A DNA stretch of 64,000 nucleotides from Heteronotia binoei (Eukaryota): the NCBI RefSeq assembly GCF_032191835.1, contig NC_083241.1, positions 310,001-374,000 on the forward strand, in the 5' to 3' direction. Below are positions 16,701 through 62,029 of the stretch, piece by piece; position 1 is the stretch's first letter; each line of letters starts with the position of its first letter. A model generated the notes under the pieces. The model did not search any database and was not told the origin of the DNA. It saw nothing but the letters and a program-made list of their open reading frames with translations. The position numbers and the translations under genes were made by a program.

Positions 16701-19700
16701 CACAGTCTGGGAAGAGGAGCGCCAAACTGGGCCCCCTCCAAGGAGCAAGGAAGGGAGAGCCACTTCTCTTCCCTGCTGATCCCTCTCTTCCCTTCCGATG
16801 CCCTCCCACGTATTTGAAATCATGCTGGAGAGAGGAAGTGGAAGAGGCTGGGGCATGCCTGCAACCAGGCTGTGAGGGAGGGAGCCCCAGCGGCTGCAGT
16901 GAGGCTGGCCAGGCGCCTGTCGGGGGGCAGGGAACCGGGGGCCCGCTTTGCCCACAGGGCGTGGTTGGCCACCTTGCCTGGGGTGGCGGGCACCCTAGCT
17001 GGTTCCTACTGCAGCAGCTGATTATTGCCCCACTCAAGCCTCAACACACTCCTGAGGCCACTCGGTTCTACACTGGTGCTGAAGTCCTACTGGCACAGCC
17101 AGGTTTATCTCCAGCTGAGCTGCCGTTTGGAGTCAGAGGTGGAAGTGGGTCTGGCAGGCATCATCCTCATCTCAATCCTCCTCTGCCCGTTCTGCCTCCA
17201 CTACATACACCTCACGCACCCCAGCGGCTCTATTCACCCTCCTACCCCACAGCTAATGTTCCCTCTAAGCTGTAGAGTCTTGTGAGCAGAAACTCTACTT
17301 TGTGAGCTACTAGCATTAAAGTGGTGAGCTGCTGCATAAATTTGTTTGCTCTGGGTCATTTCTCGTGAGCTAAGACAAAAATGCATGAGCCAGTAGCTAA
17401 AAAACTGTGAGCTAGCTCACACTAACTCAGCCTAGAGGGAACACTGCCCACAGCCTATACACAACCCTGACCTGTTCCTCCCCCCTCCAGGCCTGGCGAT
17501 GCCACCAGTTATCAGCACCCCCTCTAGCCTGCCTGGCGCATCTCCTAGAGAAGGACCCAGACACTGTGTTTGTTCATAGGAGACACAGGAAAAGGAAAGG
17601 TCCCCTCCCTGTGCACCAGTCCTTTCCGACTCTGGGGTGACTTTGTTGCTTTCACAACGTTTTCACGGCAGACTTTTTACGGGGTGGTTTGCCACTGCCT
17701 TCCCCAGTCTTTACACTTTCCCCCCAGGAAGCTGGGGACTCATTTTACCAACCTCAGAAGGATGGAAGGCTGACTCAACCTCGAGCCGGCTACCTGAACC
17801 AGCTTCTGCTGGAATCGAACTCAGGTCGTGAGCAGAGGGTTCCGACTGCAATACTGCAGCTTTCCCACTCTGCGCCACGGGGCTCTTATTACAGGAGACA
17901 CAACTGCACATCAATTAGGACACTTAAGCAGCACCTAGTAGCAGCAAAGACTGCGGCAACAGAAACAGCACAGAAGTTCAGAAGCCACTGGAGTCTCATG
18001 GCGACTGTGCTGCATTACAGGAAATCTAATTAAAACTCAAACTTTTCATATTTACTTATTATGTTTAGTGGATTTATATTCCGCCCTACCCCGTGAACAG
18101 GCTCAGGACAGATCACAACAAAATCAAAACTCTAGCACTGGACTACTTTGCACTAGCAAAAAAGCTACACTGGTTCAATTAAGCTGGAAAGGAAAAAATT
18201 CCTTCTAAAAATCAGAGTCTGTTTTCAGTATCAAGAGAGAGCGTGAAAACCTTTCTAGTTTACATTTCTATGACAATAAATGTTTTGGCCACACTTTGTT
18301 CTAAATATCGGACTCACTTTTAATACAAAAGTGCAGAAGTCTAAATGTAGCAGCAGCAGCAAACCATCATTTGTATTCCAGTGTTCTTTTGTAAAGCTGA
18401 ATTTCTTGACTAAGGATGGGCATGGACTGTGCACGGACAAAATTTTTCAACAGTCTGTGGATCCATCAGCCCATTCCGTGCACGCAGGAGAGCCAGTTTG
18501 GTGTGGTGGTTAAGTATGCGGACTCTCGTCTGGGAGAATCGGGTTTGATTCCCCACTCCTCCACTTGCAGCTGCTACAATGGCCGTGGGTCAGCCATAGC
18601 TCTAATAGAGAGCCAGTTTGGTGTGGTGGTTAAGTATGCGGACTCTTGTCTGGGAGAACCGGGTTTGATTCCCCACTCCTCCACTTGCAGCTGCTGGAAT
18701 GGCCGTGGGTCAGCCATAGCTCTCTCTGGGAGAACCGGGTTTGATTCCCCACTCCTCAACTTGCAGCTGCTGGAATGGCCTTGGGTTAGCCAGAGCTCTC
18801 TTATCTGGGAGAACCGGGTTTGATTCCCCACTCCTCCTCTTGCAGCTGCTGGAATGGCCTTGGGTCAGCCAGAGCTCTCTTATCTGGGAGAACCGGGTTT
18901 GATTCCCCACTCCTTCACTTGCAGCTGCTGGAATGGCCTTGGGTCAGCCAGAGCTCTCTTATCTGGGAGAACCGGGTTTGATTCCCCACTCCTCCACTGG
19001 CAGCTGCTGGAATGGCCTTGGGTCAGCCAGAGCTCTCTTATCTGGGAGAACCGGGTTTGATTCCCCACTCCTCCACTTGCAGCTGCTGGAATGGCCGTGG
19101 GTCAGCCATAGCTCTCTTATCTGGGAGAACCGGGTTTGATTCCCCACTCCTCCACTTGCAGCTGCTGGTGTGACCTTGGGTCAGCCATAGCTCTGGTAGA
19201 GACTGTCCTTGAAAAGGCAGCTGCTGTAAAAGCTCTCACAGCCCCAACTACCTCACAGGGTGCCTGTTGTGTGTGGGGGGGAGGTAAAGGAGACTGTGAT
19301 CACTCTGAGACTCAGAGATTCAGAGTATCTGGCAGGATATAAATCCAATAAATCCAATATCATTATCACGCACTGACCTGAGCCTCCATGGACCATCCCA
19401 GAAAGTCCATGGGCTTGTGCGGGGGCAAGTGTTACAAAAGCTGCGCAGCGTGCGAGTGAAGGCCATGTAGTGACTTTGCTCACTTTTCTGGTGGGTGAAC
19501 GTGCCACTCAGTCTTCACTCACACGCCATCCAGCTTCGCAGCATGTGCAGTGCAAGAGGGAAGGCCAAGCGGCAGTGGGTGAACTCGCCATTCGGTCTTC
19601 ATTTACACACCATCCAGCTTCGCAGCATGTGCAGCACAAGAGGGAAGGCCAAGCGGCAGTGGGTGAACTCGCCATTCGGTCTTCATTTACACACCATCCA

Positions 19701-43541: not shown

Positions 43542-50746
<7,205 letters not shown>

Positions 50747-51590
50747 TGAGGAGAGAGAGCCAGGGGACCACTGTCCCTGCTCCCTCCACACAAGGCTGCC
50801 CACTGGAAAGGTAGTCCCCCCTCCCCCTCTCAGGCACCTGGAGCGAAGGGGGCGGGCTGCGCTGTGTGTGGCAGGGGCCTCTCTGACCTCCAGGCACCTT
50901 CAAGGGGCCATTCTTCAGCAGCCCCAGGCAAAGAAAGGCCGGTCACCCCAGAGGCCAGATGACCCCCTCAGCCCTTCAGAAGGGAGGGAGCTCTGAAGGC
51001 CACACAAAGTGCCTGAGTGCCACTGCTGACATCCATGCCACAGGGCTGGCAGCCCCGGCTCCTCCTCAGACCAGCAGCAGCCCTCCAGGGTCTCTCCTCC
51101 GGCCTGGTCCGTTGAACTCGGGGACCTTCTGCATGCCAAGCAGCTGCTCTGCCTGTCTCGGAGCCACAGCCCTTCGCCAAGCATCATGTCTGGGATCCTG
51201 GCGAGGGGGCAGAGATGGAGGGGGGCCCAGGCCTCAAGGACACCCCCATGAGCACAAGGCTGATAGAGCCCGGTGGGCAGAACTGTCGGCCTGAAGCAAC
51301 GGAACAAAGCTTGCAAACAGGGACACCTGCAAAGCCCACAAAGTTCAATTTTGGATATAAGGTTTTGTGTACACGTCCATGCCAGCTTCTGCCCAGCATG
51401 AAGCTTTCTTGGTCTGAAAGGACTGGAGCACAGTGTGGGTGGCTGTGGTCCTCGGGACTTCCCTGCCCGGGCCTGGTGACAGATTGCGGCTCCCCATAAG
51501 GACAGGGCCAGAGGCCAAGGGAGGCGGAGGGAGGGAGCTGCAGCAGGGCTTGGAGCAGTTGTACAACAGGCAAGAGCCAAGGGACGTTGG

Positions 51591-52711
51591 TGTCGAGAGC
51601 CAGGCCAGGGCAGCACCGGCCACACCGTCAGAGCACGGAATGAGTAAGGCAAGTTGTTGGGAAATAGGATTAAATTCAGAGGTGTGGAGTGGCAATAATC
51701 GGAGATGAGGCTTAAGCTTAGCAAAAGAAATAAAGTTTACTAGCAAAACATCAGGGAAAGGTACTTGGGATAAAAGAAATACAACTTCGCTTACCAGCAT
51801 GTCTAAATACTTCTGGTCTCTACATGGCTATGGTTTTATAACTCTTTGTTAGACTAGTTCTTGTTCCCAGAAAGCATTTGGAACAGGCTATTCAGCTTGC
51901 ATACAAGATCAAAGCTTTTCACACCTAACGTGCTGCCTGACCAATGCAATGTTCACGTTTCCCAGGCTTAGAGGAGTCAGTCCCTAATTGGGTTTTAGCT
52001 ACAATACATCATTTCCTCTTTCAGGTAAACAAAGCTAACTCTATAATGTCTGAAATTTGCATAACTTGTATTCCAACACAAGAGCACCAACCCAAGCAGT
52101 GTAGCCAAGGTCCCACCCAAGGTCAGTCTGCCCAAGGGTCAGTCTCTACAGCAACTCTTGGCAGTCCAAGAGTTATCCTCAGGCAGGTTCAAGGGCCAGA
52201 TGAATGCAAAGTCAGGGAATGGTCCAAAGAACTACAGGAACAAGGCAGGACCCAATGCAGTGGTCACGGTGTCAGAGGGATTTCAACTTGGTTCATCCCT
52301 TGGCTGGTTTTTATAGCTATATGCTAGAGGGTCATGCTGTTTAGGAATAATCCTGCAACTACTCATCTTTGCTATCAACAAGCAGCTGGCATTGGGCCAA
52401 GAAGTGTACACTCTGTCCTCTCTCCTGTAGCTGTATTCGTAGCTTCCATTCTGCAGCACTCAAAGGTGTGGGTGATACTGGAGGGCTGGGAACAATTGAC
52501 TTTCACCTGCTGAATCGGGGCTGAAGGGTGTTGGTGACTCTGCTCTCTGCTGCAGCTGTTGGCTGTAAACCCGGACAAGCCTGCAGCTCATTTTCCTGCT
52601 TGCCAGCTTTTGTGGATTCAGAGCTGGCTGCACAGCAATCCTCTTCTCCTCAGGAGTCCTCACTGTCACTGAGCTCTGGCTGACCCACAACAATTGGATG
52701 TGCAGGTGACA
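51591..52711. mobile_element. Older LTR-like element (TGTC...TGACA) hosting the solo LTR
   Basis: TG..CA ends and Gypsy-LTR-like composition; no clean TSD. Confidence 0.4.
51655..52078 (-). mobile_element. Solo LTR (424 bp)
   Basis: TGTTGG...CCAACA ends; TSD caagt/caaga; TATAAAA on the minus strand at ~51834-51840 and AGTAAA/T-rich segment toward the left end. Confidence 0.75.
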
Positions 52712-52832
52712 AAAGCAAGGGGCCATCCATACTGGGAGCACTCTCTCACTGGTAACCCTGAAATCACAGCACAACATCACCCCCCTGAGGAGCCCAGTGA
52801 TGCACACAAGAGATGACCAGTCCCATCCCACA

Positions 52833-55800
52833 GGAGGGAAGAGACAGGAGGCCTAAACAGATAAGCCTCAGTGCCACTTGGCTGCTTCCTCTGAGGTTAA
52901 GATGGGCAAATCTTGCTTCATGGTGGAAGGAGAGCCTTGCGCTCTATGGGGATGCTGCCCCTCCTCCCAGATGGAGGCACTTTGCCTACGCCCCTGGGGA
53001 TGATCTCCCAAGAAGGGAGGGCGAGGATGGGTCCTGGAGGGGGTCTGGTCACCTATCTGTTGGTCCAGCTCTCTAGCCCCTCTCCAACACAGGTGAAGCT
53101 TCCCAGGTCATGATGATCTCCACCTCCTGCAGCTCCCCTTCCTTCCTCCGGAGGGATTAGGAAGCCCAGGGTCCATCCCCCCACCTCAGTCCTGGGCCCT
53201 ACAGCACCACCCCATTCTTTGCAAGGATCTGCCCTGCCAGCACCCAGCAGCCGACACTCCGATCTGCCCATCCCTCTGAGGTGGCGGCAGGGGCTTTCTT
53301 CAGCAACAGGCCACAGAGGGAGTCAGTCTCTGTCCCTAGGAGGGAGTTCCCGCCAGCTCTTCCCATGCCCTCCTAGGGGGCTCCCCTGCTCGCCTTTGTC
53401 AAAGACAGCTGGGCACTGCTCTGGGCTGAACGTGGCGGGTGAGGCTCCTGTATGTGGGAGACAGGTCCTCAGTCAGGGCTTCAGCCTCTGCTACCTTCCA
53501 AGGCAAGGGGGGAAGCGGTCCTGAGAGCAGAGCGACTGGGAGCCAGCCTGCCCTGAAAAGTGGGGGTGAGGAAAAGAGCTGGCCCCCCAAAAGAGAAAGG
53601 TCCCCAAATCTGATCTCCAGGCCAGAAGAACGTCTGCTCCTGCAGCCACCATCATCTCCAGCGTTGGGCCCCATGCTCTGCTTCCCTGATGCAGCCTGGA
53701 GCAGGGTAGGGCAGGCAAAGTCAGGGCCGGGGGCTGCCCGTGGGCACAGAATTCTTTGCCTCCCCGCCCACTGCTTTGGACCATGCAGCATGGGGGGCTT
53801 CAAGCCCAGGCAGATTTTGACTCTCATAGTCACTTCCCCTCGACTAGCCCCCTCATTTCTGCAAGATCCCTCCCAATATTTGGCCGCCTGCAGTGGACAG
53901 TCCTCAGCCAGACATGCCCCCGGGGTGGGGGAGATGCATCCTGCCCCAAGATCTAAATGACCCAGAGGAGGACTGACCAGACCCCCAGGCTGCTCACACG
54001 GTCCAGCTGCCCTCTGCTCCCCCCTGCCCCTCTCAGGCCCCTCAGTCCACAGACAAAATCCCTGCTTAAAACCCCGCCTCTTGGCCACTTCCTTCTTACC
54101 AGAAAAGCAGATGCGAAGAACCCGACTTGCAGGCCCCTGGGGGGGGGGGCCAAACATCCCCCCCAAGCGGCTCATCTCTGACCCCCAGTCTAACCAGTGC
54201 AATGCGATCGCTGAGCACAAGGTCCCCCGAAAATCTGCAGCAGCACCCCTCCCAGCCCTCCAGCTCCGCCCTCTCTGAGGAGGCCCCTCCCCCCAGTCCT
54301 GTGGGGCCTGCCTGTGACTGGCTTGGCCTGCTGCTGCTGACTACCAAGGGCTGCGGATGATTCAGTGTCAGCAGAGAGGCCAGCAGTCTCCCCACCCCCA
54401 CGGGGGGAATCCCAGCCCCCCCCACATCCTCTTTCCAGCCCAGCCCCCCCTGCTTTGTGGCTCTCCCCCCCTCCCGTTAGTCAGTTTGCAGTCAGCAGCA
54501 AGCCTGAGATCTGGACTCCGAAAAGGCCCGCCTGGCTCAGCCGGCGACCTTGGGCCACTCTCTGAGAGGCATGCTGGCAATAAACTAGGGTTGCCAACCT
54601 ACAGGTGGGACCTGGAGATCTCCTGGAACAACACCTGGTCTCCAGCTCCCTGCAGAGGTGGCAGCTTCGGAGGATCAGCTCCACGCATTCTGACTCTGGT
54701 TGAAACCCCTGCCCAGGTTCCACACCCCCAAATCTCTGGGGAGCTCCACCCCGGGGGCAGTGGCAATCCCAGCTCCTTTACAGAGCCTTCAGCAGATGCC
54801 GACTTGGGACGGGGCACTGCAGCAGCCTGGGGGGTTCCTTTTTGGGGTGGGGTTGCTGCTTCTCCTGCAAGCAGCTCAGAGCTGCATAGGTGTCTGTTCC
54901 CTCACAACGACCTCGTGAGGTAGGTCAGGCTGAGGAAAAGTGGTCAAGGTCTGGAGGGAGGCTGTGAACTCTGTTCGAAGGATGGGAAAGCACCGGCTCT
55001 GAGGTTCCACTGGGCAGCCCTGAGGGGGAGGGGAGATGGGACCCTCCAGAGCACCACTTGCTGGCCACCCCTGGGTGCCCAACTGGCCCTCTGCTTCCGT
55101 GGAAAGGAATCTGGCTTCTGTCTGGTCAGGCTCTCTGCTACTGGCAGGGGAGAAGCCAGGAGGGCACTGTCTCTCTCCAGCACGATCAACAGCTGCCATC
55201 TGGCGACTCTGCTGGGGTGCAGCCAACTCCCTCCTTCCCACCTTGCTCCCCCCCCTTGGTGAAGAGGCCTGCAGGCTCCCTCCTGGGACTCTTCTGCCTG
55301 CGGAGGGGGAGGGGGCACTTGTGGGGTCTCACCAAGGCCCGGAGCCAGAGAGGGGGCAACCAGGACAGGCTCACTGGACAGGTCACTTCCAGCACTCTCT
55401 CCTGGCACTGGCCAGAGTCATGCAGCCAGATTTCTGCTTCCAGGCAGAGCCCGTCTCCACCCCCTGCTCAGACCTCTCCTCCTCAGCTCTCTTCCACAGG
55501 CAGCCCATCCTCCGTGGAGGAACGGGGGGAGGGGGCGTTGTTCAGTAGCAGCTGCAGGTGGATGCAGAGAGGAAGCTGCTGGGAAAACTGGGGTGGGTGG
55601 GAGGAACAGCCCCCCGCCCCCGGTGCTGTGGCAGCCCAGGGGATGGTTGTGTGGTGCAGCTGCCCGGCAGGGGGGGTCTCTCCTTCACAGGCCAAGCACC
55701 CTCCGACCTCTGTCTGGGCACCTTCAGGAGTGGCACCAGCCGGGGCCTCCCAGCTGCTGCTCCCTCCTGGCTCTGGGTGGCAGGGCTGCCCGCTCCCCTC

Positions 55801-55950
55801 CAGCTTCCTGCTGGGTCTTGTCCTGGGCCTTGCCTGCTTGGAAGCGGAGTCATGCCCCAGGGGGGAAGGCCTTCTGGGAAGGGGCTGCGGTGTGTCCCTG
55901 GGCCTGCCCTCCCCAGGCCAGCCAGATGTGAGCGCTTGGCTCAAGGACAA
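52833..55950 (+). pseudogene. STRC: Decayed stereocilin-like sequence (STRC relic)
   Basis: Collinear matches to remembered human STRC: ANLAS~ANISS (52906), LYGD/MLPLL~LLGDMLALL, GGLVTYLLVQL~GGLVEVLLGAL, AAPLPS~AADWLPS, APPHSLQG~AAPHFLQG, TAGHCSG~TNGQCQG then GTGAGG donor (53439); further on PLLW..QIL, PENLQQ, WPSA, AAN, PAQ, LLGKL. Stops and frameshifts throughout. Syntenic position, but orientation is opposite to mammalian STRC. Confidence 0.6.
54586..54772. mobile_element. Short interspersed element (tagggttgccaacc...ggcaatccc), MITE-like; degenerate copy at ~2150-2280
   Basis: Terminal motifs and shared internal ggagatctcc...tctccag. Confidence 0.55.
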
Positions 55951-55957
55951 CTGCTAA

Positions 55958-56107
55958 GTGTTGGGAGCAAAAATCCTACTTTGTGAGCTGCTGGCATTAA
56001 AGCTGTGAGCTGCTCTGGGTCTTCCTTCCTGAGCTAAGACAAAAATGTGTGAGCTGGAGGCTAAAAATCTGTGAGCTAGCTCACGTGAACTCATCTTAGA
56101 GGGAACC
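55958..56107. mobile_element. Truncated copy of the hAT MITE at 17254-17446
   Basis: ctactttgtgagct...gagctagctcac...ttagagggaac. Confidence 0.75.
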
Positions 56108-56407
56108 CTGCCTGTGTTGTGTGTGAAGTGCCCTGAAGTCTCTTCCGCCACCGTGGCTTCCTGCATGGAGTCAACTCAGGCCGCCCCCCCCCTCCCCGCC
56201 TTGCCTTGCCTGGCCGTCTTCTTCCAGGCAGCCTCTTGTGTCTTCTCAGCCACCAAAGGGGGGGGAGAGAGAAGAGCCTCCCTTGGGTCATTGCAGCTTC
56301 TAAGAAGAGTCCAGGCTTCAGCTACATCAGACTGGCTTTGATCTGAGACTGCTAGGGGCAGTGCTGAATTGGGGCCTGCTCAGTCCCTCATGGCCTTGTG
56401 GCCCAGA

Positions 56408-56702
56408 GTGCTAAAGCAGCAGTACTGCAGTATTGTGGTCTGAACTCTCTGCTCATGACCTGAGTTCGATCTGCAGCGGAAGCTGTTTTTTCAGGTAGCC
56501 GGCTTGAGGTTGATGCAGCCTTCTATCCTTCTGAGCTTGTAAAATGAGTCCCCAGCTTGCTGGGGGGGAAAGGGTAGATGACTGGAGAAGGCAATAGCAA
56601 ACCACCCCCTAAAAAGTCTGCCGTGAAAACGTTGTGAAAGCAACGTCACCCGAGAGTCGGAAACGACTGGTGCTTGCACAGGGGACCTTTCCTTTCCTTT
56701 CC
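56408..56702 (-). mobile_element. Sauria-type SINE
   Basis: Reverse complement of the 17583-17888 family. Confidence 0.85.
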
Positions 56703-57159
56703 TTTCCCAGTCCCGGCACCCATTGTGGCCTAAAGAAGTGCCTGCCCCCCCCCCCCAAAGGGAGAGTCTGGAGCTGCCTGCCCCCTCCCCCTCTCCTCAC
56801 TAGCCGAGCCCTCCTCCGGGCCCCTTCCTCCTTGAGGCAGGCGGCCTGTGCTGACAAGGGGGAGGGCGCTGGCAGCAGAGCCTGGAGAAGAAGAGCCCTC
56901 CCTGGCTGACCCCCGGGCTCCAGGCCGCCCTTGCAGTGGTGGAAAGCCTGCCCCGGGGACAGAAGTCTGGCCTCTCAAGAGGGAGGGGTGGACAGTGCCC
57001 CCCAAGGCTGCCAGGGGAGAAGGGAAGGAGCGGCCTCCCGCCTGGCCCCTACAAGGGCTCTTTAGCCAGGGGAGAGTGGCCTGGCTTGGAAGGCTTTGCG
57101 GAGCTCAGCCCCGGAAGGCAGGCAGGCAGGCAGCCAAGCTAGGCCAGGCCAGGCCGGCC

Positions 57160-57294
57160 ACTCCCTCGCACGTGCCTGAGGCGCCGAGGGGCGGGGCTTC
57201 CGCGCGCGGCCGGGCCAATGGGGGCCGGGGGGGCGGGCGGGCGCGAGGCTTCAAAGGGGCGGCGGCGAGGGGCGCAGGAGGGGGCGGCGGCGGC
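57160..57294 (+). promoter_or_regulatory. ZIP1-like promoter: CACGTG E-box 57169-57174, GC box 57188-57196, CCAAT 57215-57219
   Basis: Motifs read directly within a CpG island. Confidence 0.55.
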
Positions 57295-57403
57295 ATGTGG
57301 TCCTTGCTGGCCGTCAAGCTGAGCTGCCTCGCGGCCCTCGGCCTCCTGCCGCTGCTCTGCGGCCTCCTCCCGGCCGCCCTGCGCCGCCGCAGCCGCCCGC
57401 CCG
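57295..57403 (+). CDS. ZIP1-like exon 1 (MWSLLAVKLSCL...RSRPP)
   Basis: cggcATG, G|GTGCGT donor. Confidence 0.82.
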
Positions 57404-58423
57404 GTGCGTCCCTCCCTCCCTGCGGGGCTGGGGGCGCCCTTCCCTCCTTCCCTCCCTCCCTTGACCGCGCTCTCTCTCTCTCTCTCTCGGCAGGCTGTGC
57501 GGGGCAGGAGGAGGAGGCCCCCGGGGCGTGGCGGGGCGTGGCGAGCTGCGCGGCCGGCGGCGTCTTCCTGGCCACTTGCCTGCTGGACGTCGTGCCCGAG
57601 TCGCTGGCCGACCTGCGCGACGAGCTGCGCCGCCAGAGGCTCGCGGTACCCGGGAGGGGGGGCGGGGGCGGGGCGGGCGAGCCTCCAGCTGCAGGAGCAG
57701 CAGCGGGAGGAGGAGCGCGGCGGGGGGGGGGGAGGAGCCGGGAGCCCCCGGGCGGGTGCGCCAACCCTGCCCGCTTTGTCTCTGTGTCTCTCCGGGCGGC
57801 AGGTGGAGTTCCCGCTGGCGGAGCTGGTGGTGGCGCTGGGCTTCCTGCTGGTGCTGGTGACGGAGCACGTGGTCGTGGAGTGCAGCCAGCCGCCGCCGGG
57901 CCCAGACGAAGCCACCCTCCTGCTGCCGCCGCCGGGCCTGGAGGCCGAGCAGCAGCTGCAGCAGAGGCGCCCCCCGTCGGGCTTCCGCGCGCTGGTGCTG
58001 ACGCTGGCGCTCTCCCTGCACGCCGTCTTCGAGGGCCTCGCCGTGGGCCTGCAGGACTCCCCCAGCAGAGTGCTCCACCTGGCCGCGGCCATCGTGCTGC
58101 ACAAGAGCGTGGTGGCCGCCAGCCTGGGCCTCCTGCTGCTCCAGAGCCGCCTCCCGCTGCGCTGGCTGGCCGCAGCCCTGGCCACCTTTGCCCTCATGTC
58201 CCCCCTGGGGGCGGGCCTGGGCATGGCGGTGACCCACGCCTCCGGCCCCGGCCGCACCGCTGCCCGCAGCATGCTGCAAGGCCTGGCCGCCGGCACCTTC
58301 ATGTACATCACCTTCCTGGAGATCCTGCCCCAGGAGCTGAGCTCTCCCGCCAGCCGCCTGCCCAAAGTTCTGGCCCTGCTCCTGGGCTTTGCTGCCATGG
58401 CTGGCCTGCGCCTCCTGGCCTGA
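57295..58423 (+). CDS. ZIP (SLC39A) subfamily II zinc transporter, ZIP1-like; exons 57295-57403, 57494-57645, 57803-58423; 293 aa
   Basis: Spliced product has 8 hydrophobic segments, GGVFLATCLLD (TM2), TM4 LHAVFEGLAVG, TM5 LHKSV, and AAGTFMYITFLEILPQEL. Intron phases 1 and 0 match the SLC39A1 layout. Exact orthology (A1/A2/A3 or a separate paralogue) cannot be settled by eye. Confidence 0.9.
57494..57645 (+). CDS. ZIP1-like exon 2 (GCAGQEEE...GGVFLATCLLD...RQRLA)
   Basis: AG/GT, 152 nt. Confidence 0.85.
57803..58423 (+). CDS. ZIP1-like exon 3 (VEFPLAEL...LRLLA*)
   Basis: AG acceptor, 621 nt, ZIP signature. Confidence 0.92.
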   Translation: MEFPLAELVVALGFLLVLVTEHVVVECSQPPPGPDEATLLLPPPGLEAEQQLQQRRPPSGFRALVLTLALSLHAVFEGLAVGLQDSPSRVLHLAAAIVLHKSVVAASLGLLLLQSRLPLRWLAAALATFALMSPLGAGLGMAVTHASGPGRTAARSMLQGLAAGTFMYITFLEILPQELSSPASRLPKVLALLLGFAAMAGLRLLA

Positions 58424-58648
58424 GGGGGCGGGACCTCGCCTGGCAACAAGACAGCCGTTTCCCGCCTGTGGCCCCCTCCACCCTTGCTGCAAATCTGAGG
58501 GGGGGGGGCGGGAACCAGAGAACCACTCTCCTCAGGGCAGCCTTTACAGGCAGGCTAAGTGGGATTCAGGACAGATCAGCCACTTTTTAAATGCTCTTAC
58601 TACTATAAGGGGAGGGCCTGTCACTGTGTTGGGCCCTTAGATGTTTTT

Positions 58649-58654
58649 ATTAAA
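58649..58654 (+). terminator. ATTAAA polyadenylation signal for the ZIP1-like gene
   Basis: 225 nt after the stop, followed by T/GT-rich sequence. Confidence 0.5.
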
Positions 58655-59215
58655 GCTATCTTGCTGCTTTGTAAGAGATTATAGAAGTTGGAGTCTCATT
58701 TGTCTGTCCTGCTTGTCTGTCAGGGTGGTTCTGTACCGGGTGGGCCCACACGTGGGTCCTTCTCACACACTGTATGGCTCCCAAAGCCCCCACCCACTGC
58801 CCCATTGACCAGCTTGCAGAAGGCATTTCTCTCTTTAAATCACTGCTCCAAGCCAAGTGGCTTTCTTCCCACCTCTCCCCCATTTATTTGCTTTCCTTCC
58901 TTCCCTCCATCCATCCTTGCACCTCTCAAACATCTTGACGTTTATTGTGTGGCTCTTAAATTAAGCAGGTTTGGCCACCCCTGTTCTGTACTTTCATCAG
59001 AGGGCCAGGGCATATAGAGTTGGGCTGCTCCTTCTTCCTTCCCCTGCAGAAAACGAACCAACCTCCCGGTGGGGAGTTCTTGCACTCCAGGGCATGCAGC
59101 GAGGAAGGAGTGTGAGAACCCGGCACCAGGTGGAGCTGCAGTGCCCCCTGCTGGAAAGGAGTGGGCTTAACCAGAGGCGCTCCAATGCAGCCATGGTGGG
59201 GGGGGGGGTGTCATA

Positions 59216-60430
59216 TTTTGTTTGCAAGACCGCCAGGCTGTTCAGAAAGAGGAGTCCTCTGGCCCAAGACTCTTCTAGGAAACACTGAAACACCGGTGGT
59301 GCTAGAGAGTGCTCTGTTCCTGGCTCCTCTTCTTCCAGTGCCTCTGACTGAGGGGGACCTTTTTGTTATTTCATGGTGCTTACAACAGTCGCCTCACAAC
59401 TGTGAACAGGCTGCATTTGGATGCCTGATAAAATTGGAAGTAGAGATGCTTGGGGGAGAATGATTCTTTCAGAACATAAAAAGTGGGGGGTTGGGGGAGC
59501 ACTGAGTTATGGAACTATTTATGACACTTTGTAGTGTTCCCCCAACCCCCCACTTTTTATGTGTACGCATGTGTGTACTGGCTTTTGTTGAGCAGGAACA
59601 CAGTTCTGGCTGGCTTGGTCTCAGGAGGTGTGGCCTAATATGCAAATGAGTTCCTGTTGGCCTTTTTCTACAAAACAGCCATATATATAGTATTTTCAGC
59701 TGTCTCACTTTGATCTAGACTAGTATGTTGAAGTGAAGGAGGGTTTCCCCCAATGTGTGGTAAAAAGGTAAAGATAGTCCCCTGTGCAAGCACCAGTCAT
59801 TTCTGACTTGGGGTGACGTTGCATCATGTTTCCACGGCAGACTTTTTTATGGGGTGGTTTGCCATTGCCTTCCCCAGTCATCTACACTTTCCCCCCCAGC
59901 AAGCTGGGTACTCATTTTACCGACCTCGGAAGGATGGAAGGCTGAGTGAACCTGGAGCCAGCTACCTGAACCCAGCTTCTGTTGGGATCGAACTCAGGTC
60001 ATGAGCAGAGGGCTCCGACTGCAGAGCTTTACCGCTCTGTGCCATGGAGCTGGCGGGCAAATTGGCCCCTGCTGAGCCCCTTCTGTGGCATCCCTGGAGT
60101 GTTTTTGGAAAGTGAGTGGAGTGAAGAGGTGGGTCTTTTGTCCAGGAAGGCTTCTGAGTGGCCTCTGGAGATGTAATTGACTGTGTGGGCATAAGGATCC
60201 TTCTTGTGTGACGGAAGGTGAGCTTTGGCAGCCATTTCAGTGGCTGACCTCACCTCCCACGGCAACCATTGAGTGGCTGTGCTCTGCTGGAATTCCAAGG
60301 GGCCCACTGCCGAAGAGGTTGGACCTACTATGAATTCACTGGTTTTCCATATTCCAAACCCCTGCAGGCAGCAAAAGCTGAGACAGGTGTGCTAAAGCAG
60401 CATAGCTTCGTCTTTGGGCCTGAGGGGGAA
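59216..60430 (-). pseudogene. Possible decayed CATSPER2 5' exons
   Basis: Three exon-sized traces in the expected order and strand: 60329-60430 PKDEAM..HT.....LQGF + GTAGGT donor; ~59325-59395 RRLL..PLS...W; 59216-59284 acceptor + CFLEESWARGLLFLNSLAVL, gapless against CPLFKNFIIFLVFLNTIILM. In-frame stops. Weak similarity. Confidence 0.38.
59762..60050 (+). mobile_element. Sauria-type SINE
   Basis: Same family as 17583-17888. Confidence 0.85.
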
Positions 60431-60692
60431 GACGTGCTAGTCCTTGTCCTTCTCACAGATCCTCCCGCTCCCACGTGCAAAGGGTGCCTCGTCTCTTGCT
60501 CTGGGGAGGGGGTTGAGGCAGGGCAAGAGCCTGGGCCCAGGCAGCAGGGAGCGACGGGAGAGAGGCGCCAGGTGGGCCTTCTCCCCTCCCAGGGGCTGCT
60601 TCGTGCGGGCCCCTCTCCCGGAGGAGGGTGGTGGGGGCTGGAGCCGGCGGGGCTGGGGAGGGCTCCTCCTTCCGAGCTGTGCTGGGGGGAGG

Positions 60693-60879
60693 TGACGTGA
60701 TGAGTGACGCTCCCCTCAGCCAGTCCCGCTTCTCAGCGCGGCGACGTAGCCCATGCGGGTCCCGCCCCCCACTCCGGGCAAGCCGCGCGGTCCCATCGCC
60801 ATGGCGACGCAGAGGAGGGGCGGCGCCCCGTCCCCATTGGTCCCCGTGGCTGTGCGCGGGCCAATGAGCGCCTGCCACA
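60693..60879 (+). promoter_or_regulatory. PDIA3 promoter with UPRE (TGACGTGA 60693-60700) and ERSE (CCAAT-N9-CCACA 60861-60879)
   Basis: Exact ERSE spacing read from the sequence; CpG island; ETS-like ACTTCCG near 60914. Confidence 0.7.
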
Positions 60880-61051
60880 CTGCAATGGGGGGGGCTGCGT
60901 CGCGGGGGGCGGGACTTCCGTCTCCTCTTTAGCTTCCCGCTGAGGGGCGCGGGAGGGAAAGCGAAAGCCGGAGCCGCCGCCAGCAGCAGCACCTTGGCCG
61001 CCTCAGCCCGCCCGCCGCCGCCTCCTCCGCCCCGCCTCGCCTCGCCCCGCC

Positions 61052-61198
61052 ATGGAGCGGCTGCTGCTGGCGCTGCTGCTGGGCCCTGCTGGCGCCCCGG
61101 CCCGGGCGCGCCTCCGACGTCCTGGAGCTCAGCGACGACGACTTCGACACCGGCCTGGCCGACCGCAGCCTCGCCCTCGTCGAGTTCTACGCGCCCTG
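61052..61198 (+). CDS. PDIA3: Protein disulfide-isomerase A3 (ERp57) exon 1; one extra G at 61081-61083 breaks the frame as assembled
   Basis: gccgccATGG, signal peptide MERLLLALLL..., then in the shifted frame ASDVLELSDDDFDTGLADRSLALVEFYAPW ending TG|GTGGGT (phase 2, just before the CGHC). Exon 2 is not in the window. Confidence 0.9.
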
Positions 61199-62029
61199 GT
61201 GGGTCCCGCCGGCCCTCCGCGGCTGAGGGAGGGGGGAGGGAGAGGGGGGAAGGGGCCGGCCGTGGGGGGAGGGGAGGGAAGGGAAGGGACCCGCCGTGGG
61301 GGGGAACGAGGGGGCGCCGGCCTCCCGCCCCCCTCAGCGCAGCACCCCCACCCCGTCTGGGGCCCTGGACTACAGCCCCCAGGATGCCTCGGGCGGGGCG
61401 GGGCCTCGTGCCGTGGCTGCTCCCGATTGGCTGCCCTAGGCCTCCTCGCCGCCTGGCATTGGCTCCCCTTGCGGAGCGGCTGCGTCAACGGCCGGAGGAG
61501 AGCTGCCCCACCCCGCAGACCCTCCAGCCTCCGCTCTCCTCACAAACACAGGCGCTGCTCTCCGTGGCTTGCTTTCATTTGGGTCGAGCGAGGCACATCT
61601 CCTAGGGTTGTTTCCCCCCCTTTTCAACAGCAAAAAAATATTTTGATAAAACAAACATGTATTTTGGGGTCAGCATAACTTTAAAATTTTAAAAACAGGT
61701 TTCTTTTTGTTAAACAATATAGTGGAAATTAAATCCACTCAGTGTGATATGCTTCTGTGTGTAACTCACTTCTCTTTGCTTTCCTGTTCTTTTTTCTGGA
61801 AAAGAAAAACAGGCTTTCCTGGTTTTTCACGTCCCAAATGCTTTCTCAGTTTGAAACAAATTAGTCCAAAATGGGGGAAAGCTACATCAGGAGAGAAGCC
61901 AGCTGCTGCTTAAAACCTCTGAGTTCAAGGCCTTAAGTTGCTTCAAACAGTTTGCTGGTGTAACTTTCTTTTAAAACATCCGCAAACATATTTCTTCAAT
62001 GGTTCAATCTTAGTTCTGAAATGCGGCTA

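What the first reader, a model, noticed from the sequence alone, without database searches (positions are those of the whole stretch)
52833..55950. Unannotated stereocilin (STRC) fossil downstream of CKMT1: possible loss of a hair-cell link protein in this lizard
Seen: no intact STRC between CKMT1 and PDIA3 (only 10.7 kb apart). One reading frame across 52950-53425 gives GMLPLL, GGLVTYLLVQL, AAPLPS, VHP, APPHSLQG, LRWRQGL..TG and TAGHCSG, followed by a GTGAGG donor. From PH to the Cys is 70 residues against 69 in remembered human STRC exon 2 (PHFLQG...ALWGGLL.TVG...TNGQCQG). Later STRC motifs follow in order (PLLWTMQH..QIL ~53770-53820, PENLQQ 54226-54243, WPSA ~55084, AAN ~55219, PAQ ~55465, LLGKL ~55580), with stops, frameshifts, lost introns and TE insertions, while neighbouring genes are clean. 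Established: STRC forms stereocilia top connectors and tectorial attachments and lies next to CKMT1 in mammals. Inference: a unitary pseudogene, or a relic left after relocation. Individual short matches can arise by chance in GC-rich DNA; the collinearity is the argument.
Basis: partly seen in the sequence, partly recalled or inferred. Interest (0 to 1): 0.8.

Follow-up and report, generated by a model that had tools for sequence, protein, structure and literature searches.

The report
Decayed stereocilin gene relic, opposite strand
This lizard (said to be a gecko) has only a badly decayed, two-exon remnant of the hearing gene stereocilin where other lizards and turtles keep the working gene.

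Summary
Twenty-six real stereocilins give no tblastn hit better than reversed queries. Collinear chains score no higher than shuffles. The motifs used (PHFLQG, PENLQQ, WPAA, LLGRL) are mammal-specific forms that lizard STRC lacks.

The broader idea is right. In Sceloporus the order is PPIP5K1–CKMT1–STRC–ZIP–PDIA3. Podarcis shows the ZIP–STRC–CKMT1 part and turtle the STRC–CKMT1 pair, and in all three STRC is convergent with CKMT1. The window has the same flanks, but only 6.9 kb where they carry a 15–23 kb gene.

DNA-level profile search finds two consecutive 3' STRC exons on the minus strand: 53,053–53,198 (E 1.7e-9) and 53,386–53,547 (E 4.6e-8). The intron between them has the same size as in Sceloporus. 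They carry four frame-shifting indels, a terminal CAG→TAG and a GT→GG donor. Substitutions are spread evenly over codon positions, and the branch is long (~0.43 substitutions/site).

Three weaker collinear traces lie towards CKMT1. The 5' four-fifths of the gene is gone.

So this is an old in-situ pseudogene. Whether an intact copy exists elsewhere in the genome could not be tested. I found no paper describing it.

The parts
53386..53547 (-). STRC relic exon B, the orthologue of the Sceloporus exon aa 1334-1391, Podarcis aa 1612-1680 and Chelonia aa 1464-1520
   Evidence: A 3-species exon profile (gecko not included) hits 53,553-53,379 on the minus strand, E 4.6e-8, 26.7 bits. It is the only hit in the 64-kb window; the best of 200 shuffled gaps scores 4.8 bits. 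Single-species nhmmer gives E 3.4e-8 for Sceloporus and 6.5e-5 for Podarcis. Alignment A4. Lesions: a 1-nt insertion at 53,501, an 8-nt deletion after 53,436, donor GT changed to GG at 53,385-53,384, and conserved Cys codons lost.
53199..53385 (-). Relic of the intron between the two exons
   Evidence: It is 187 nt here, against 182 nt in Sceloporus (L003 24,699-24,880) and 575 nt in Podarcis. The AG acceptor at 53,200-53,199 was read by eye, from a low-confidence part of the alignment together with the sequence.
53053..53198 (-). STRC relic exon A, the orthologue of the Sceloporus exon aa 1391-1442, Podarcis aa 1681-1722 and Chelonia aa 1520-1572. The solid core is 53,049-53,170.
   Evidence: The 3-species profile hits 53,169-53,049 on the minus strand, E 1.7e-9, 32.7 bits. 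It is the only hit in the window; the best of 200 shuffles scores 7.3 bits. Alignment A3. The minus-strand translation reads GELQEVEI..W..VL, then a frameshift, then GEGLESWTNR* followed by GT; lizards have EELQELEIPDWGALSVLGGLEGWTERQ|gt. Lesions: +1 nt at 53,156, +3 nt at 53,111-53,109, +2 nt at 53,084-53,083, and last codon CAG changed to TAG at 53,055-53,053. The donor GT is kept.
52395..52449 (-). Possible trace of the next exon (Sceloporus aa 1442-1489). Weak.
   Evidence: A 2-species profile restricted to the 50,337-53,050 slot gives E 0.029 on the minus strand, in the expected order. Not significant on its own.
51476..51522 (-). Possible trace of the exon Sceloporus aa 1490-1539. Weak.
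   Evidence: E 0.0096 in the restricted slot and 0.026 in the whole gap, on the minus strand and in the expected order. Alignment A5 shows a roughly 46-nt stretch about 74% identical to Sceloporus.
50536..50560 (-). Very weak trace of the last STRC exon, next to the CKMT1 3' end
   Evidence: E 0.33-0.9. It is listed only because it is in the right order and on the right strand. It may be chance, or conservation of the CKMT1 3' UTR.
50220..50336 (+). Last coding exon and stop of CKMT1; left border of the STRC slot
   Evidence: blastn to Podarcis, Sceloporus and Chelonia CKMT1 is 86-88% identical. Splice sites and stop were read. CKMT1 reads as an intact 418-aa ORF over 9 exons, 43,542-50,336.
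53548..57255 (.). Rest of the slot up to the ZIP gene. It has no detectable STRC sequence and holds repeat copies at about 54,400-54,800, 55,800-56,200 and 56,400-56,800.
   Evidence: No exon of three species hits here below E 0.01 on either strand. Contig depth of run X1 is 73-2,216 at the repeat stretches, against 0-20 elsewhere. Copies of 55,957-56,112 and 56,398-56,700 occur elsewhere in the window.
57256..58426 (+). ZIP (SLC39A-like) zinc transporter gene, 4 exons; right border of the STRC slot
   Evidence: Pfam PF02535, E 3.4e-39. Four blocks 71-84% identical to the ZIP genes that lie head-to-head with STRC in Podarcis and Sceloporus.

Best explanation
The window holds an old, in-situ remnant of the stereocilin gene (STRC) on the minus strand, in the ancestral position and orientation: convergent with CKMT1, and upstream of the ZIP gene and PDIA3.

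Two consecutive exons from the 3' part of the gene, and the intron between them, are still recognisable at 53,053-53,547. They cannot encode protein: they carry four frame-shifting indels, a stop codon and a destroyed splice donor. Three faint traces towards CKMT1 may be further 3' exons.

The 5' four-fifths of the gene is no longer there. That part includes the Stereocilin (PF21058) domain and is about 14.5 kb in Sceloporus. The 3.7 kb that takes its place is partly transposon copies. So the gene at this locus is dead and has evolved without coding constraint for a long time.

Shown: homology, position, orientation, the lesions and the flat codon-position pattern.

Inferred: that much of the gene was physically deleted; that the loss is of the order of 100 million years old; and that this animal has no working STRC anywhere.

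For: Synteny:
- Sceloporus L003 has PDIA3(-) ZIP(-) STRC(+) CKMT1(-) PPIP5K1(+).
- Podarcis L001 has ZIP(-) STRC(+) CKMT1(-).
- Chelonia L002 has STRC(+) and CKMT1(-) 438 nt apart.
- The window shares the CKMT1, ZIP, PDIA3 and PPIP5K1 exons at 71-89% identity, but has 6.9 kb in place of a 15-23 kb STRC.

Homology:
- nhmmer of the gap against STRC gene DNA gives E 2.8e-15 for Sceloporus, and 2.7e-7 and 2e-4 for Podarcis, all on the minus strand and falling on two consecutive exons.
- Exon profiles built without the gecko give E 1.7e-9 and 4.6e-8. Each is the sole hit in 64 kb; shuffles reach at most 7.3 bits.
- The intron is 187 nt, against 182 nt in Sceloporus.

Decay:
- The lesions are listed.
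- Differences by codon position are flat for the gecko (39/36/42, 38/38/35, 43/41/43). Among functional genes they run 3rd > 1st > 2nd (22/12/35, 28/15/41, 32/24/45).
- The gecko branch is about 0.43 substitutions/site, against about 0.24 on the turtle side.
- In a simulation, cross-family tblastn loses a decaying STRC at 0.4 substitutions/site or more. That explains why the protein searches were blank.

Distribution:
- Only lacertids and Sceloporus among squamates appear as full-length STRC in two database searches.
- There is no squamate among the partial representatives whose names were looked up.
Against: - Only about 300 nt of exon sequence is solidly homologous. The other three traces are not significant on their own.
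- Protein-level tools see nothing.
- No reads of this genome could be laid on the relic, so the assembly and the individual lesions are not independently checked. Run X1 has no contig at 52,800-54,399, and no DNA run was listed.
- The rest of this genome could not be searched, so a second, intact STRC is not excluded.
- The age estimate rests on 287 aligned sites and on neutral rates recalled from memory.
Confidence: 0.85

Rival explanations
1. One reading: a plus-strand STRC fossil whose 'exon 2' lies at 52,950-53,425, followed by later motifs in order up to about 55,580, with lost introns and TE insertions.
For: The strings exist. The spacing from PH to Cys is 70 residues, against 66-69 in cat-family and macaque STRC. 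Against macaque residues 281-380 alone, Smith-Waterman gives p about 0.025.
Against: - It is on the wrong strand for the conserved convergent arrangement.
- There is no tblastn, chain or profile signal above reversed or shuffled controls.
- Scores are within the null against cat-family, lizard and turtle STRC.
- The motifs are therian-specific and are replaced in squamates: PHKVVQ for PENLQQ, WQEA for WPAA, LLLSQAL for LLLGRLL, DGKCSVG for NGQCQG.
- PHFLQG to PENLQQ is about 525-535 residues (about 1.6 kb of coding sequence) in mammals, but 1.0 kb apart here.
- Two of the strings are antisense to real minus-strand exons.
Confidence: 0.03
2. A relic plus a relocated or duplicated gene: the copy at this locus is dead, but an intact STRC survives elsewhere in the genome, so stereocilin function is kept.
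For: It cannot be excluded, because no tool here searches the rest of this genome. The scan's notes cover only part of it and mention no other STRC. STRC has been duplicated in other lineages: fish strc1 appears, and the human STRCP1 duplicate is recalled from memory.
Against: - No gecko stereocilin of any length turned up among 235 and 108 homologues.
- None was among the partial representatives whose names were looked up.
- The position next to CKMT1 is conserved in turtle, two lizard families and a toad; the toad case is the fused model P0056.
- The relic is old, so a surviving paralogue would need to have been kept for a very long time outside the conserved locus.
Confidence: 0.25
3. Assembly artefact: the real genome carries an intact STRC here, and the assembly collapsed or dropped it.
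For: The region is G+C-rich (55-66%) and repeat-bearing. There are N gaps 2-3 kb upstream, inside CKMT1 (47,220-48,604). No reads of the species could be laid across the slot.
Against: - There is no N between 48,605 and 64,000.
- The two exons that are present are about 35-45% diverged at DNA level, with even codon-position decay, indels, a stop and a lost donor. A collapse cannot produce that.
- An independent 2015 run matches 55,027-55,519 at about 98% identity.
Confidence: 0.03
4. No STRC relic at all: the minus-strand matches are chance or compositional.
For: nhmmer bias terms are sizeable (7-19 bits). The DNA is G+C-rich. Protein tools are blank.
Against: - Two independent exons each hit once only in 64 kb, at E 1e-8 to 1e-9, with profiles that exclude the gecko. 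200 shuffles reach at most 7.3 bits.
- Three species agree on the same exons.
- Order, strand, intron length and distance from CKMT1 all match the orthologous genes.
- The exon-end and donor motifs align.
Confidence: 0.02

Closest known systems
Functional STRC of other sauropsids (Sceloporus undulatus XP_042327423, Podarcis lilfordi, Zootoca vivipara, Chelonia mydas XP_043380033)
   Same: Same chromosomal slot, with STRC convergent with CKMT1 in all of them; in the two lizards it is also head-to-head with the ZIP gene, and PDIA3 beyond ZIP is seen in Sceloporus. The two relic exons are orthologous. The intron length matches Sceloporus.
   Different: Those genes have 26-28 coding blocks over 15-23 kb and encode 1,650-1,900 aa with the PF21058 domain. 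Here about 300 nt of broken exon sequence remains.
Human STRCP1 (the STRC pseudogene in the 15q15.3 segmental duplication; recalled from memory, not tested here)
   Same: A non-functional STRC copy next to a CKMT1 gene.
   Different: STRCP1 is a young, near-full-length duplicate that coexists with a working STRC. This relic sits at the single ancestral locus, is very old and is mostly deleted.
Unitary pseudogenes and gene losses described in squamates (claw keratins in snakes and worm lizards, PMC11704414; taste, light-associated and claw genes in snakes, bioRxiv 10.1101/127654)
   Same: An ancestral vertebrate gene left as a decayed remnant in conserved synteny.
   Different: Judging by their titles and abstracts, those losses accompany an obvious regressed trait. 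Geckos are not known for regressed hearing (my own knowledge), so no matching trait loss is evident.

Membership tests
STRC (stereocilin) orthologue | Sequence homology to STRC exons | tested here: met
   Two exons at DNA level: E 1.7e-9 and 4.6e-8 with 3-species profiles, each the sole hit in the window and far above shuffles. Three species agree.
STRC (stereocilin) orthologue | Conserved position and orientation: between CKMT1 and ZIP/PDIA3, convergent with CKMT1 | tested here: met
   The relic is on the minus strand, 2.7-3.2 kb from the CKMT1 stop. The orthologous exons lie 1.9-2.9 kb from it in the two lizards.
STRC (stereocilin) orthologue | Stereocilin domain (Pfam PF21058) present | tested here: not met
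   There is no PF21058 hit in 124 stop-free pieces on both strands of 50,400-60,900. The part of the gene that encodes the domain is missing. This is expected for a truncated relic, and it means no stereocilin protein can be made here.
Pseudogene | Disabling lesions in the orthologous reading frame | tested here: met
   Four frame-shifting indels (+1 and +2 nt in exon A; +1 and -8 nt in exon B), CAG changed to TAG at the end of exon A, donor GT changed to GG after exon B, and most exons absent.
Pseudogene | Loss of coding constraint (substitutions even over codon positions, long branch) | tested here: met
   39/36/42, 38/38/35 and 43/41/43 for the gecko, against 22/12/35, 28/15/41 and 32/24/45 among functional genes. 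Branch about 0.43 against about 0.24. The sample is small (287 sites).
Unitary pseudogene (true gene loss) | No intact paralogue or relocated copy elsewhere in the genome | not testable with these tools
   There is no whole-genome search of this species. The only indirect evidence is that no gecko STRC appeared in the protein searches.
Unitary pseudogene (true gene loss) | No STRC transcript in the inner ear | not testable with these tools
   No RNA run was listed.

The most novel reading that the evidence does not exclude
Stereocilin was lost early in gecko evolution, of the order of 100 million years ago, and is absent from geckos as a group. Animals with acute, vocal-communication hearing and tectorial or sallet-covered hair bundles would then build their bundle top connectors and tectorial attachments without the protein that mammals need for this. 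The patchy appearance of STRC among squamates in the databases (only lacertids and Sceloporus) hints that the loss may be wider still.
Probability: 0.4. Interest if true: 0.75.

Novelty: new member of a known kind. Interest (0 to 1): 0.55.

Why it matters
In mammals, stereocilin is needed for the horizontal top connectors of outer-hair-cell bundles and for their attachment to the tectorial membrane, and its loss causes deafness (DFNB16); this is established knowledge, not tested here.

The gene is kept in the same chromosomal slot, next to CKMT1, in the turtle, the two lizards and (by a fused gene model) a toad examined here. A lizard lineage that hears well yet carries only a decayed remnant would be a natural knockout. 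It would ask which proteins replace stereocilin in non-mammalian hair bundles, and whether its role differs between tectorial, sallet-covered and free-standing bundles.

The case also carries a methodological lesson. The relic was invisible to every protein-level search and was found only by DNA profile search guided by synteny. The motif-by-memory reading landed on the right place for the wrong reasons.

Tried and rejected
1. Pfam scans of ten pieces, and then of 124 stop-free pieces of 50 aa or more on both strands of 50,400-60,900, gave no stereocilin or mesothelin-type hit. They did reveal the ZIP gene.
2. tblastn of 26 stereocilins against the window found nothing above reversed-query controls.
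3. A collinear HSP-chain test on the claimed region and on the whole gap, both strands, gave real chains no better than shuffles.
4. A six-frame hmmsearch with an 18-species STRC profile had a top score of 2.1 bits, equal to the shuffle maximum. The positive control on Podarcis gave 22 domains.
5. My own frameshift-tolerant protein-to-DNA alignment was noisy, because the lacertid N-terminus is low-complexity. Its + strand peaks at 55.2-56.2 kb map to inconsistent protein positions in Podarcis, Chelonia and Sceloporus, and they overlap a high-copy repeat. I rejected them.
6. blastn with word size 9 of the three loci against the window missed the relic. nhmmer found it.
7. Reads: only one small 2015 DNA run (X1) held any of the region. 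It has no contig on the relic, so neither the assembly nor expression could be checked.
8. I wanted to look at the same slot in other geckos through clusters of the window's CKMT1 or ZIP protein. These are spliced products with no reference, so I left that step out rather than type them.
It was used only to fish. Everything downstream rests on proteins the tools returned and that the sources name stereocilin, all with PF21058.
10. Papers: none holds stereocilin together with gecko; the few that hold it with lizard or gene loss are not on this subject.
Full report
One + strand frame across 52,946-53,449 reads GMLPLL…GGLVTYLLVQL…AAPLPS…PPHSLQG…LRWRQGL…TAGHCSG. CKMT1 is on the + strand. I read it as an intact 418-aa frame over nine exons, 43,542-50,336. 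PDIA3 exon 1 is on the + strand near 61,060-61,204.

**Getting real stereocilins.** No tool fetches a protein by name. It matched exon-sized fragments at 76-97% identity. A profile of those fragments (A2) then retrieved full-length proteins. The sources name these stereocilin in cats, green turtle, ostrich, caecilian, toad and coelacanth, and those I scanned all carry Pfam PF21058. Two further searches added lacertid lizards (Zootoca, Podarcis, Lacerta) and Sceloporus undulatus. Everything below uses these tool-returned sequences, not the seed.

**The + strand reading fails its own test.**
- tblastn with 26 stereocilins gives a best E of 0.11-0.29 anywhere in the window and nothing below E 1 in 52.8-55.95 kb. 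Reversed queries reach E 0.024.
This holds on either strand, for both the claimed region and the whole CKMT1-ZIP gap.
- An 18-species profile against the six-frame translation scores 2.1 bits, equal to the maximum of 30 shuffles. The same profile finds 22 domains in the Podarcis gene.
- The 168-residue 'exon 2' frame scores within the null against cat-family, Zootoca, Sceloporus and turtle STRC, and p≈0.07 against macaque.
Where mammals have PENLQQ, WPAA, CAANG, LLLGRLL and NGQCQG, lizards have PHKVVQ, WQEA, CVARG, LLLSQAL and DGKCSVG. A lizard relic should not resemble the human sequence exactly where lizard genes differ.
- The spacing is also too tight. PHFLQG to PENLQQ is about 525-535 residues in mammals but about 1.0 kb of DNA here.

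**Synteny shows where and how STRC should lie.** In Sceloporus the order is PDIA3(−), ZIP(−), STRC(+), CKMT1(−), PPIP5K1(+). Podarcis shows ZIP(−), STRC(+), CKMT1(−). In the green turtle STRC(+) ends 438 nt from the end of CKMT1(−). A toad gene model even fuses the two (P0056). Turned to the window's orientation this is PPIP5K1–CKMT1(+)–STRC(−)–ZIP(+)–PDIA3(+).

The window shares all the flanking exons. CKMT1 is 76-89% identical, a four-exon ZIP zinc-transporter gene at 57,256-58,426 is 71-84% identical, and PDIA3 exon 1 and PPIP5K1 exons also match. The STRC slot is therefore 50,337-57,255 on the minus strand. It measures 6.9 kb, where Podarcis has 15.3 kb, Sceloporus 16.6 kb and turtle 23.3 kb of gene.

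**The real relic.** nhmmer of that slot against the STRC gene DNA of the three species gave minus-strand matches at window 53,010-53,582. The E-values were 2.8e-15 for Sceloporus, and 2.7e-7 and 2e-4 for Podarcis. Exon maps place the matches on two consecutive exons: Sceloporus aa 1334-1391 and 1391-1442, Podarcis aa 1612-1680 and 1681-1722, and Chelonia aa 1464-1520 and 1520-1572.

Profiles built from the three functional genes alone hit 53,169-53,049 (E 1.7e-9, 32.7 bits) and 53,553-53,379 (E 4.6e-8, 26.7 bits). Each is the only hit in the 64-kb window. The best of 200 shuffled gaps plus the reversed gap is 7.3 and 4.8 bits. The alignments (A3, A4) run up to the exon ends and splice donors. 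The intron between the exons is 187 nt, against 182 nt in Sceloporus. The distance from the CKMT1 stop is 2.7-3.2 kb, against 1.9-2.9 kb in the lizards.

**It is dead and old.** Exon A carries +1, +3 and +2-nt insertions, and its last codon is TAG instead of CAG; its donor GT is kept. Exon B carries a +1 insertion, an 8-nt deletion and a GG in place of the donor GT, and its conserved cysteine codons are gone.

Differences from the functional genes are spread evenly over codon positions: 39/36/42, 38/38/35 and 43/41/43. The functional genes differ mostly at third positions: 22/12/35, 28/15/41 and 32/24/45. The gecko branch is about 0.43 substitutions per site, against about 0.24 on the much longer turtle side.

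A simulation of neutral decay of the Podarcis gene shows that cross-family tblastn loses all signal at 0.4 substitutions per site or more. This explains why every protein-level search was blank. With lizard neutral rates near 1-2×10⁻⁹ per site per year (my memory, not a tool result), the decay points to a loss of the order of 10⁸ years. This is a rough inference from 287 sites.

**What else is left.** Towards CKMT1, the best minus-strand hits of the next exons fall in the right order at 52,449-52,395 (E 0.029), 51,522-51,476 (E 0.0096; about 74% identical over about 46 nt in A5) and 50,560-50,536 (E 0.9). They are suggestive only.

Upstream of exon B, from 53.55 to 57.25 kb, no exon of any species matches. 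That 3.7 kb would have to hold about 1,330 codons and their introns (about 14.5 kb in Sceloporus), so most of the gene has been deleted. Part of what is there is repeat copies, judging by contig depth in run X1 (73-2,216 at 54.4-54.8, 55.8-56.2 and 56.4-56.8 kb) and by copies elsewhere in the window.

GGLVTYLLVQL (53,042-53,071) is the antisense of the end of exon A (…LESWTNR*|gt). KTAGHCSG (53,402-53,425) is the antisense of the end of exon B (…SPEQCPAVFDKGEQ).

**What could not be settled.**
- No reads of this genome were available on the relic, so the assembly and the individual lesions are unverified. The depth of decay cannot be an assembly artefact, however.
- The rest of the genome cannot be searched with these tools, so a second, intact STRC is not excluded.
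- Indirectly, no gecko stereocilin appeared in the two homologue searches or among the partial representatives I looked up; among squamates only lacertids and Sceloporus appeared. Those searches have length filters and candidate caps.
- An earlier agent's note calls this genome the gecko Heteronotia binoei. I did not verify that.
- I found no paper linking stereocilin to geckos or to gene loss in reptiles.

**Verdict.** A genuine but very old STRC pseudogene remnant lies in the ancestral slot on the minus strand. It is a new example of a known kind of thing, a unitary-type pseudogene. It is of moderate interest because stereocilin is central to mammalian hair-bundle mechanics and geckos hear well.

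Noticed in passing
window 57256-58426 (+): A four-exon ZIP (SLC39A-like, PF02535) zinc-transporter gene sits in a CpG island between the STRC slot and PDIA3, and its frame looks intact. The same gene lies head-to-head with STRC in Podarcis and Sceloporus. From memory, mammals have CATSPER2 between STRC and PDIA3 instead.
   Followed up: partly
protein searches: Among squamates, only lacertids (Zootoca, Podarcis, Lacerta) and Sceloporus appear with full-length stereocilin. No snake, anole, agamid, skink, varanid or gecko appears. This could be a wider pattern of STRC loss in squamates, or an effect of annotation and search filters.
   Followed up: no
P0226 and its cluster (Sceloporus undulatus STRC): Sceloporus STRC has 11 predicted isoforms. 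In the alignment it lacks conserved N-terminal features, for example the Cys of the D-G-K-C-S-V-G motif. This may reflect relaxed constraint or poor gene models in this iguanian.
   Followed up: no
window 56398-56700 and 59764-60051; also 17591-17884: Three copies of one SINE-like element, about 83% alike. Two of them are inverted and bracket the ZIP gene. The element is very high in copy number in run X1 (depth up to about 1,500).
   Followed up: partly
   Followed up: no
window 47220-48604: Three runs of N (582, 517 and 205 nt) lie inside a CKMT1 intron. The flanking exons (46,712-47,108 and 48,896-49,117) are consecutive in Podarcis and Sceloporus, so no exon seems hidden. I did not try to fill them.
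   Followed up: partly
window 59216-60430 (neighbouring note s1-340829, 'CATSPER2 fossil'): P0120 is a fused database model that carries both Stereocilin and Ion_trans domains. In tblastn it gave no hit in 59.2-60.4 kb. Sceloporus has no called gene between ZIP and PDIA3. This is only a weak test of that neighbouring claim.
   Followed up: partly
window 55027-55519: Two contigs of a small 2015 DNA run (X1, organism coded) match at about 98% identity and at single-copy-like depth. So this unique part of the slot exists in an independent sample of the same or a very close species.
   Followed up: partly
P0056 (Pelobates cultripes): A database gene model fuses stereocilin with mitochondrial creatine kinase. 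This is an annotation artefact of the tight convergent STRC-CKMT1 arrangement, and it is independent evidence that the pair is adjacent in frogs.
   Followed up: partly
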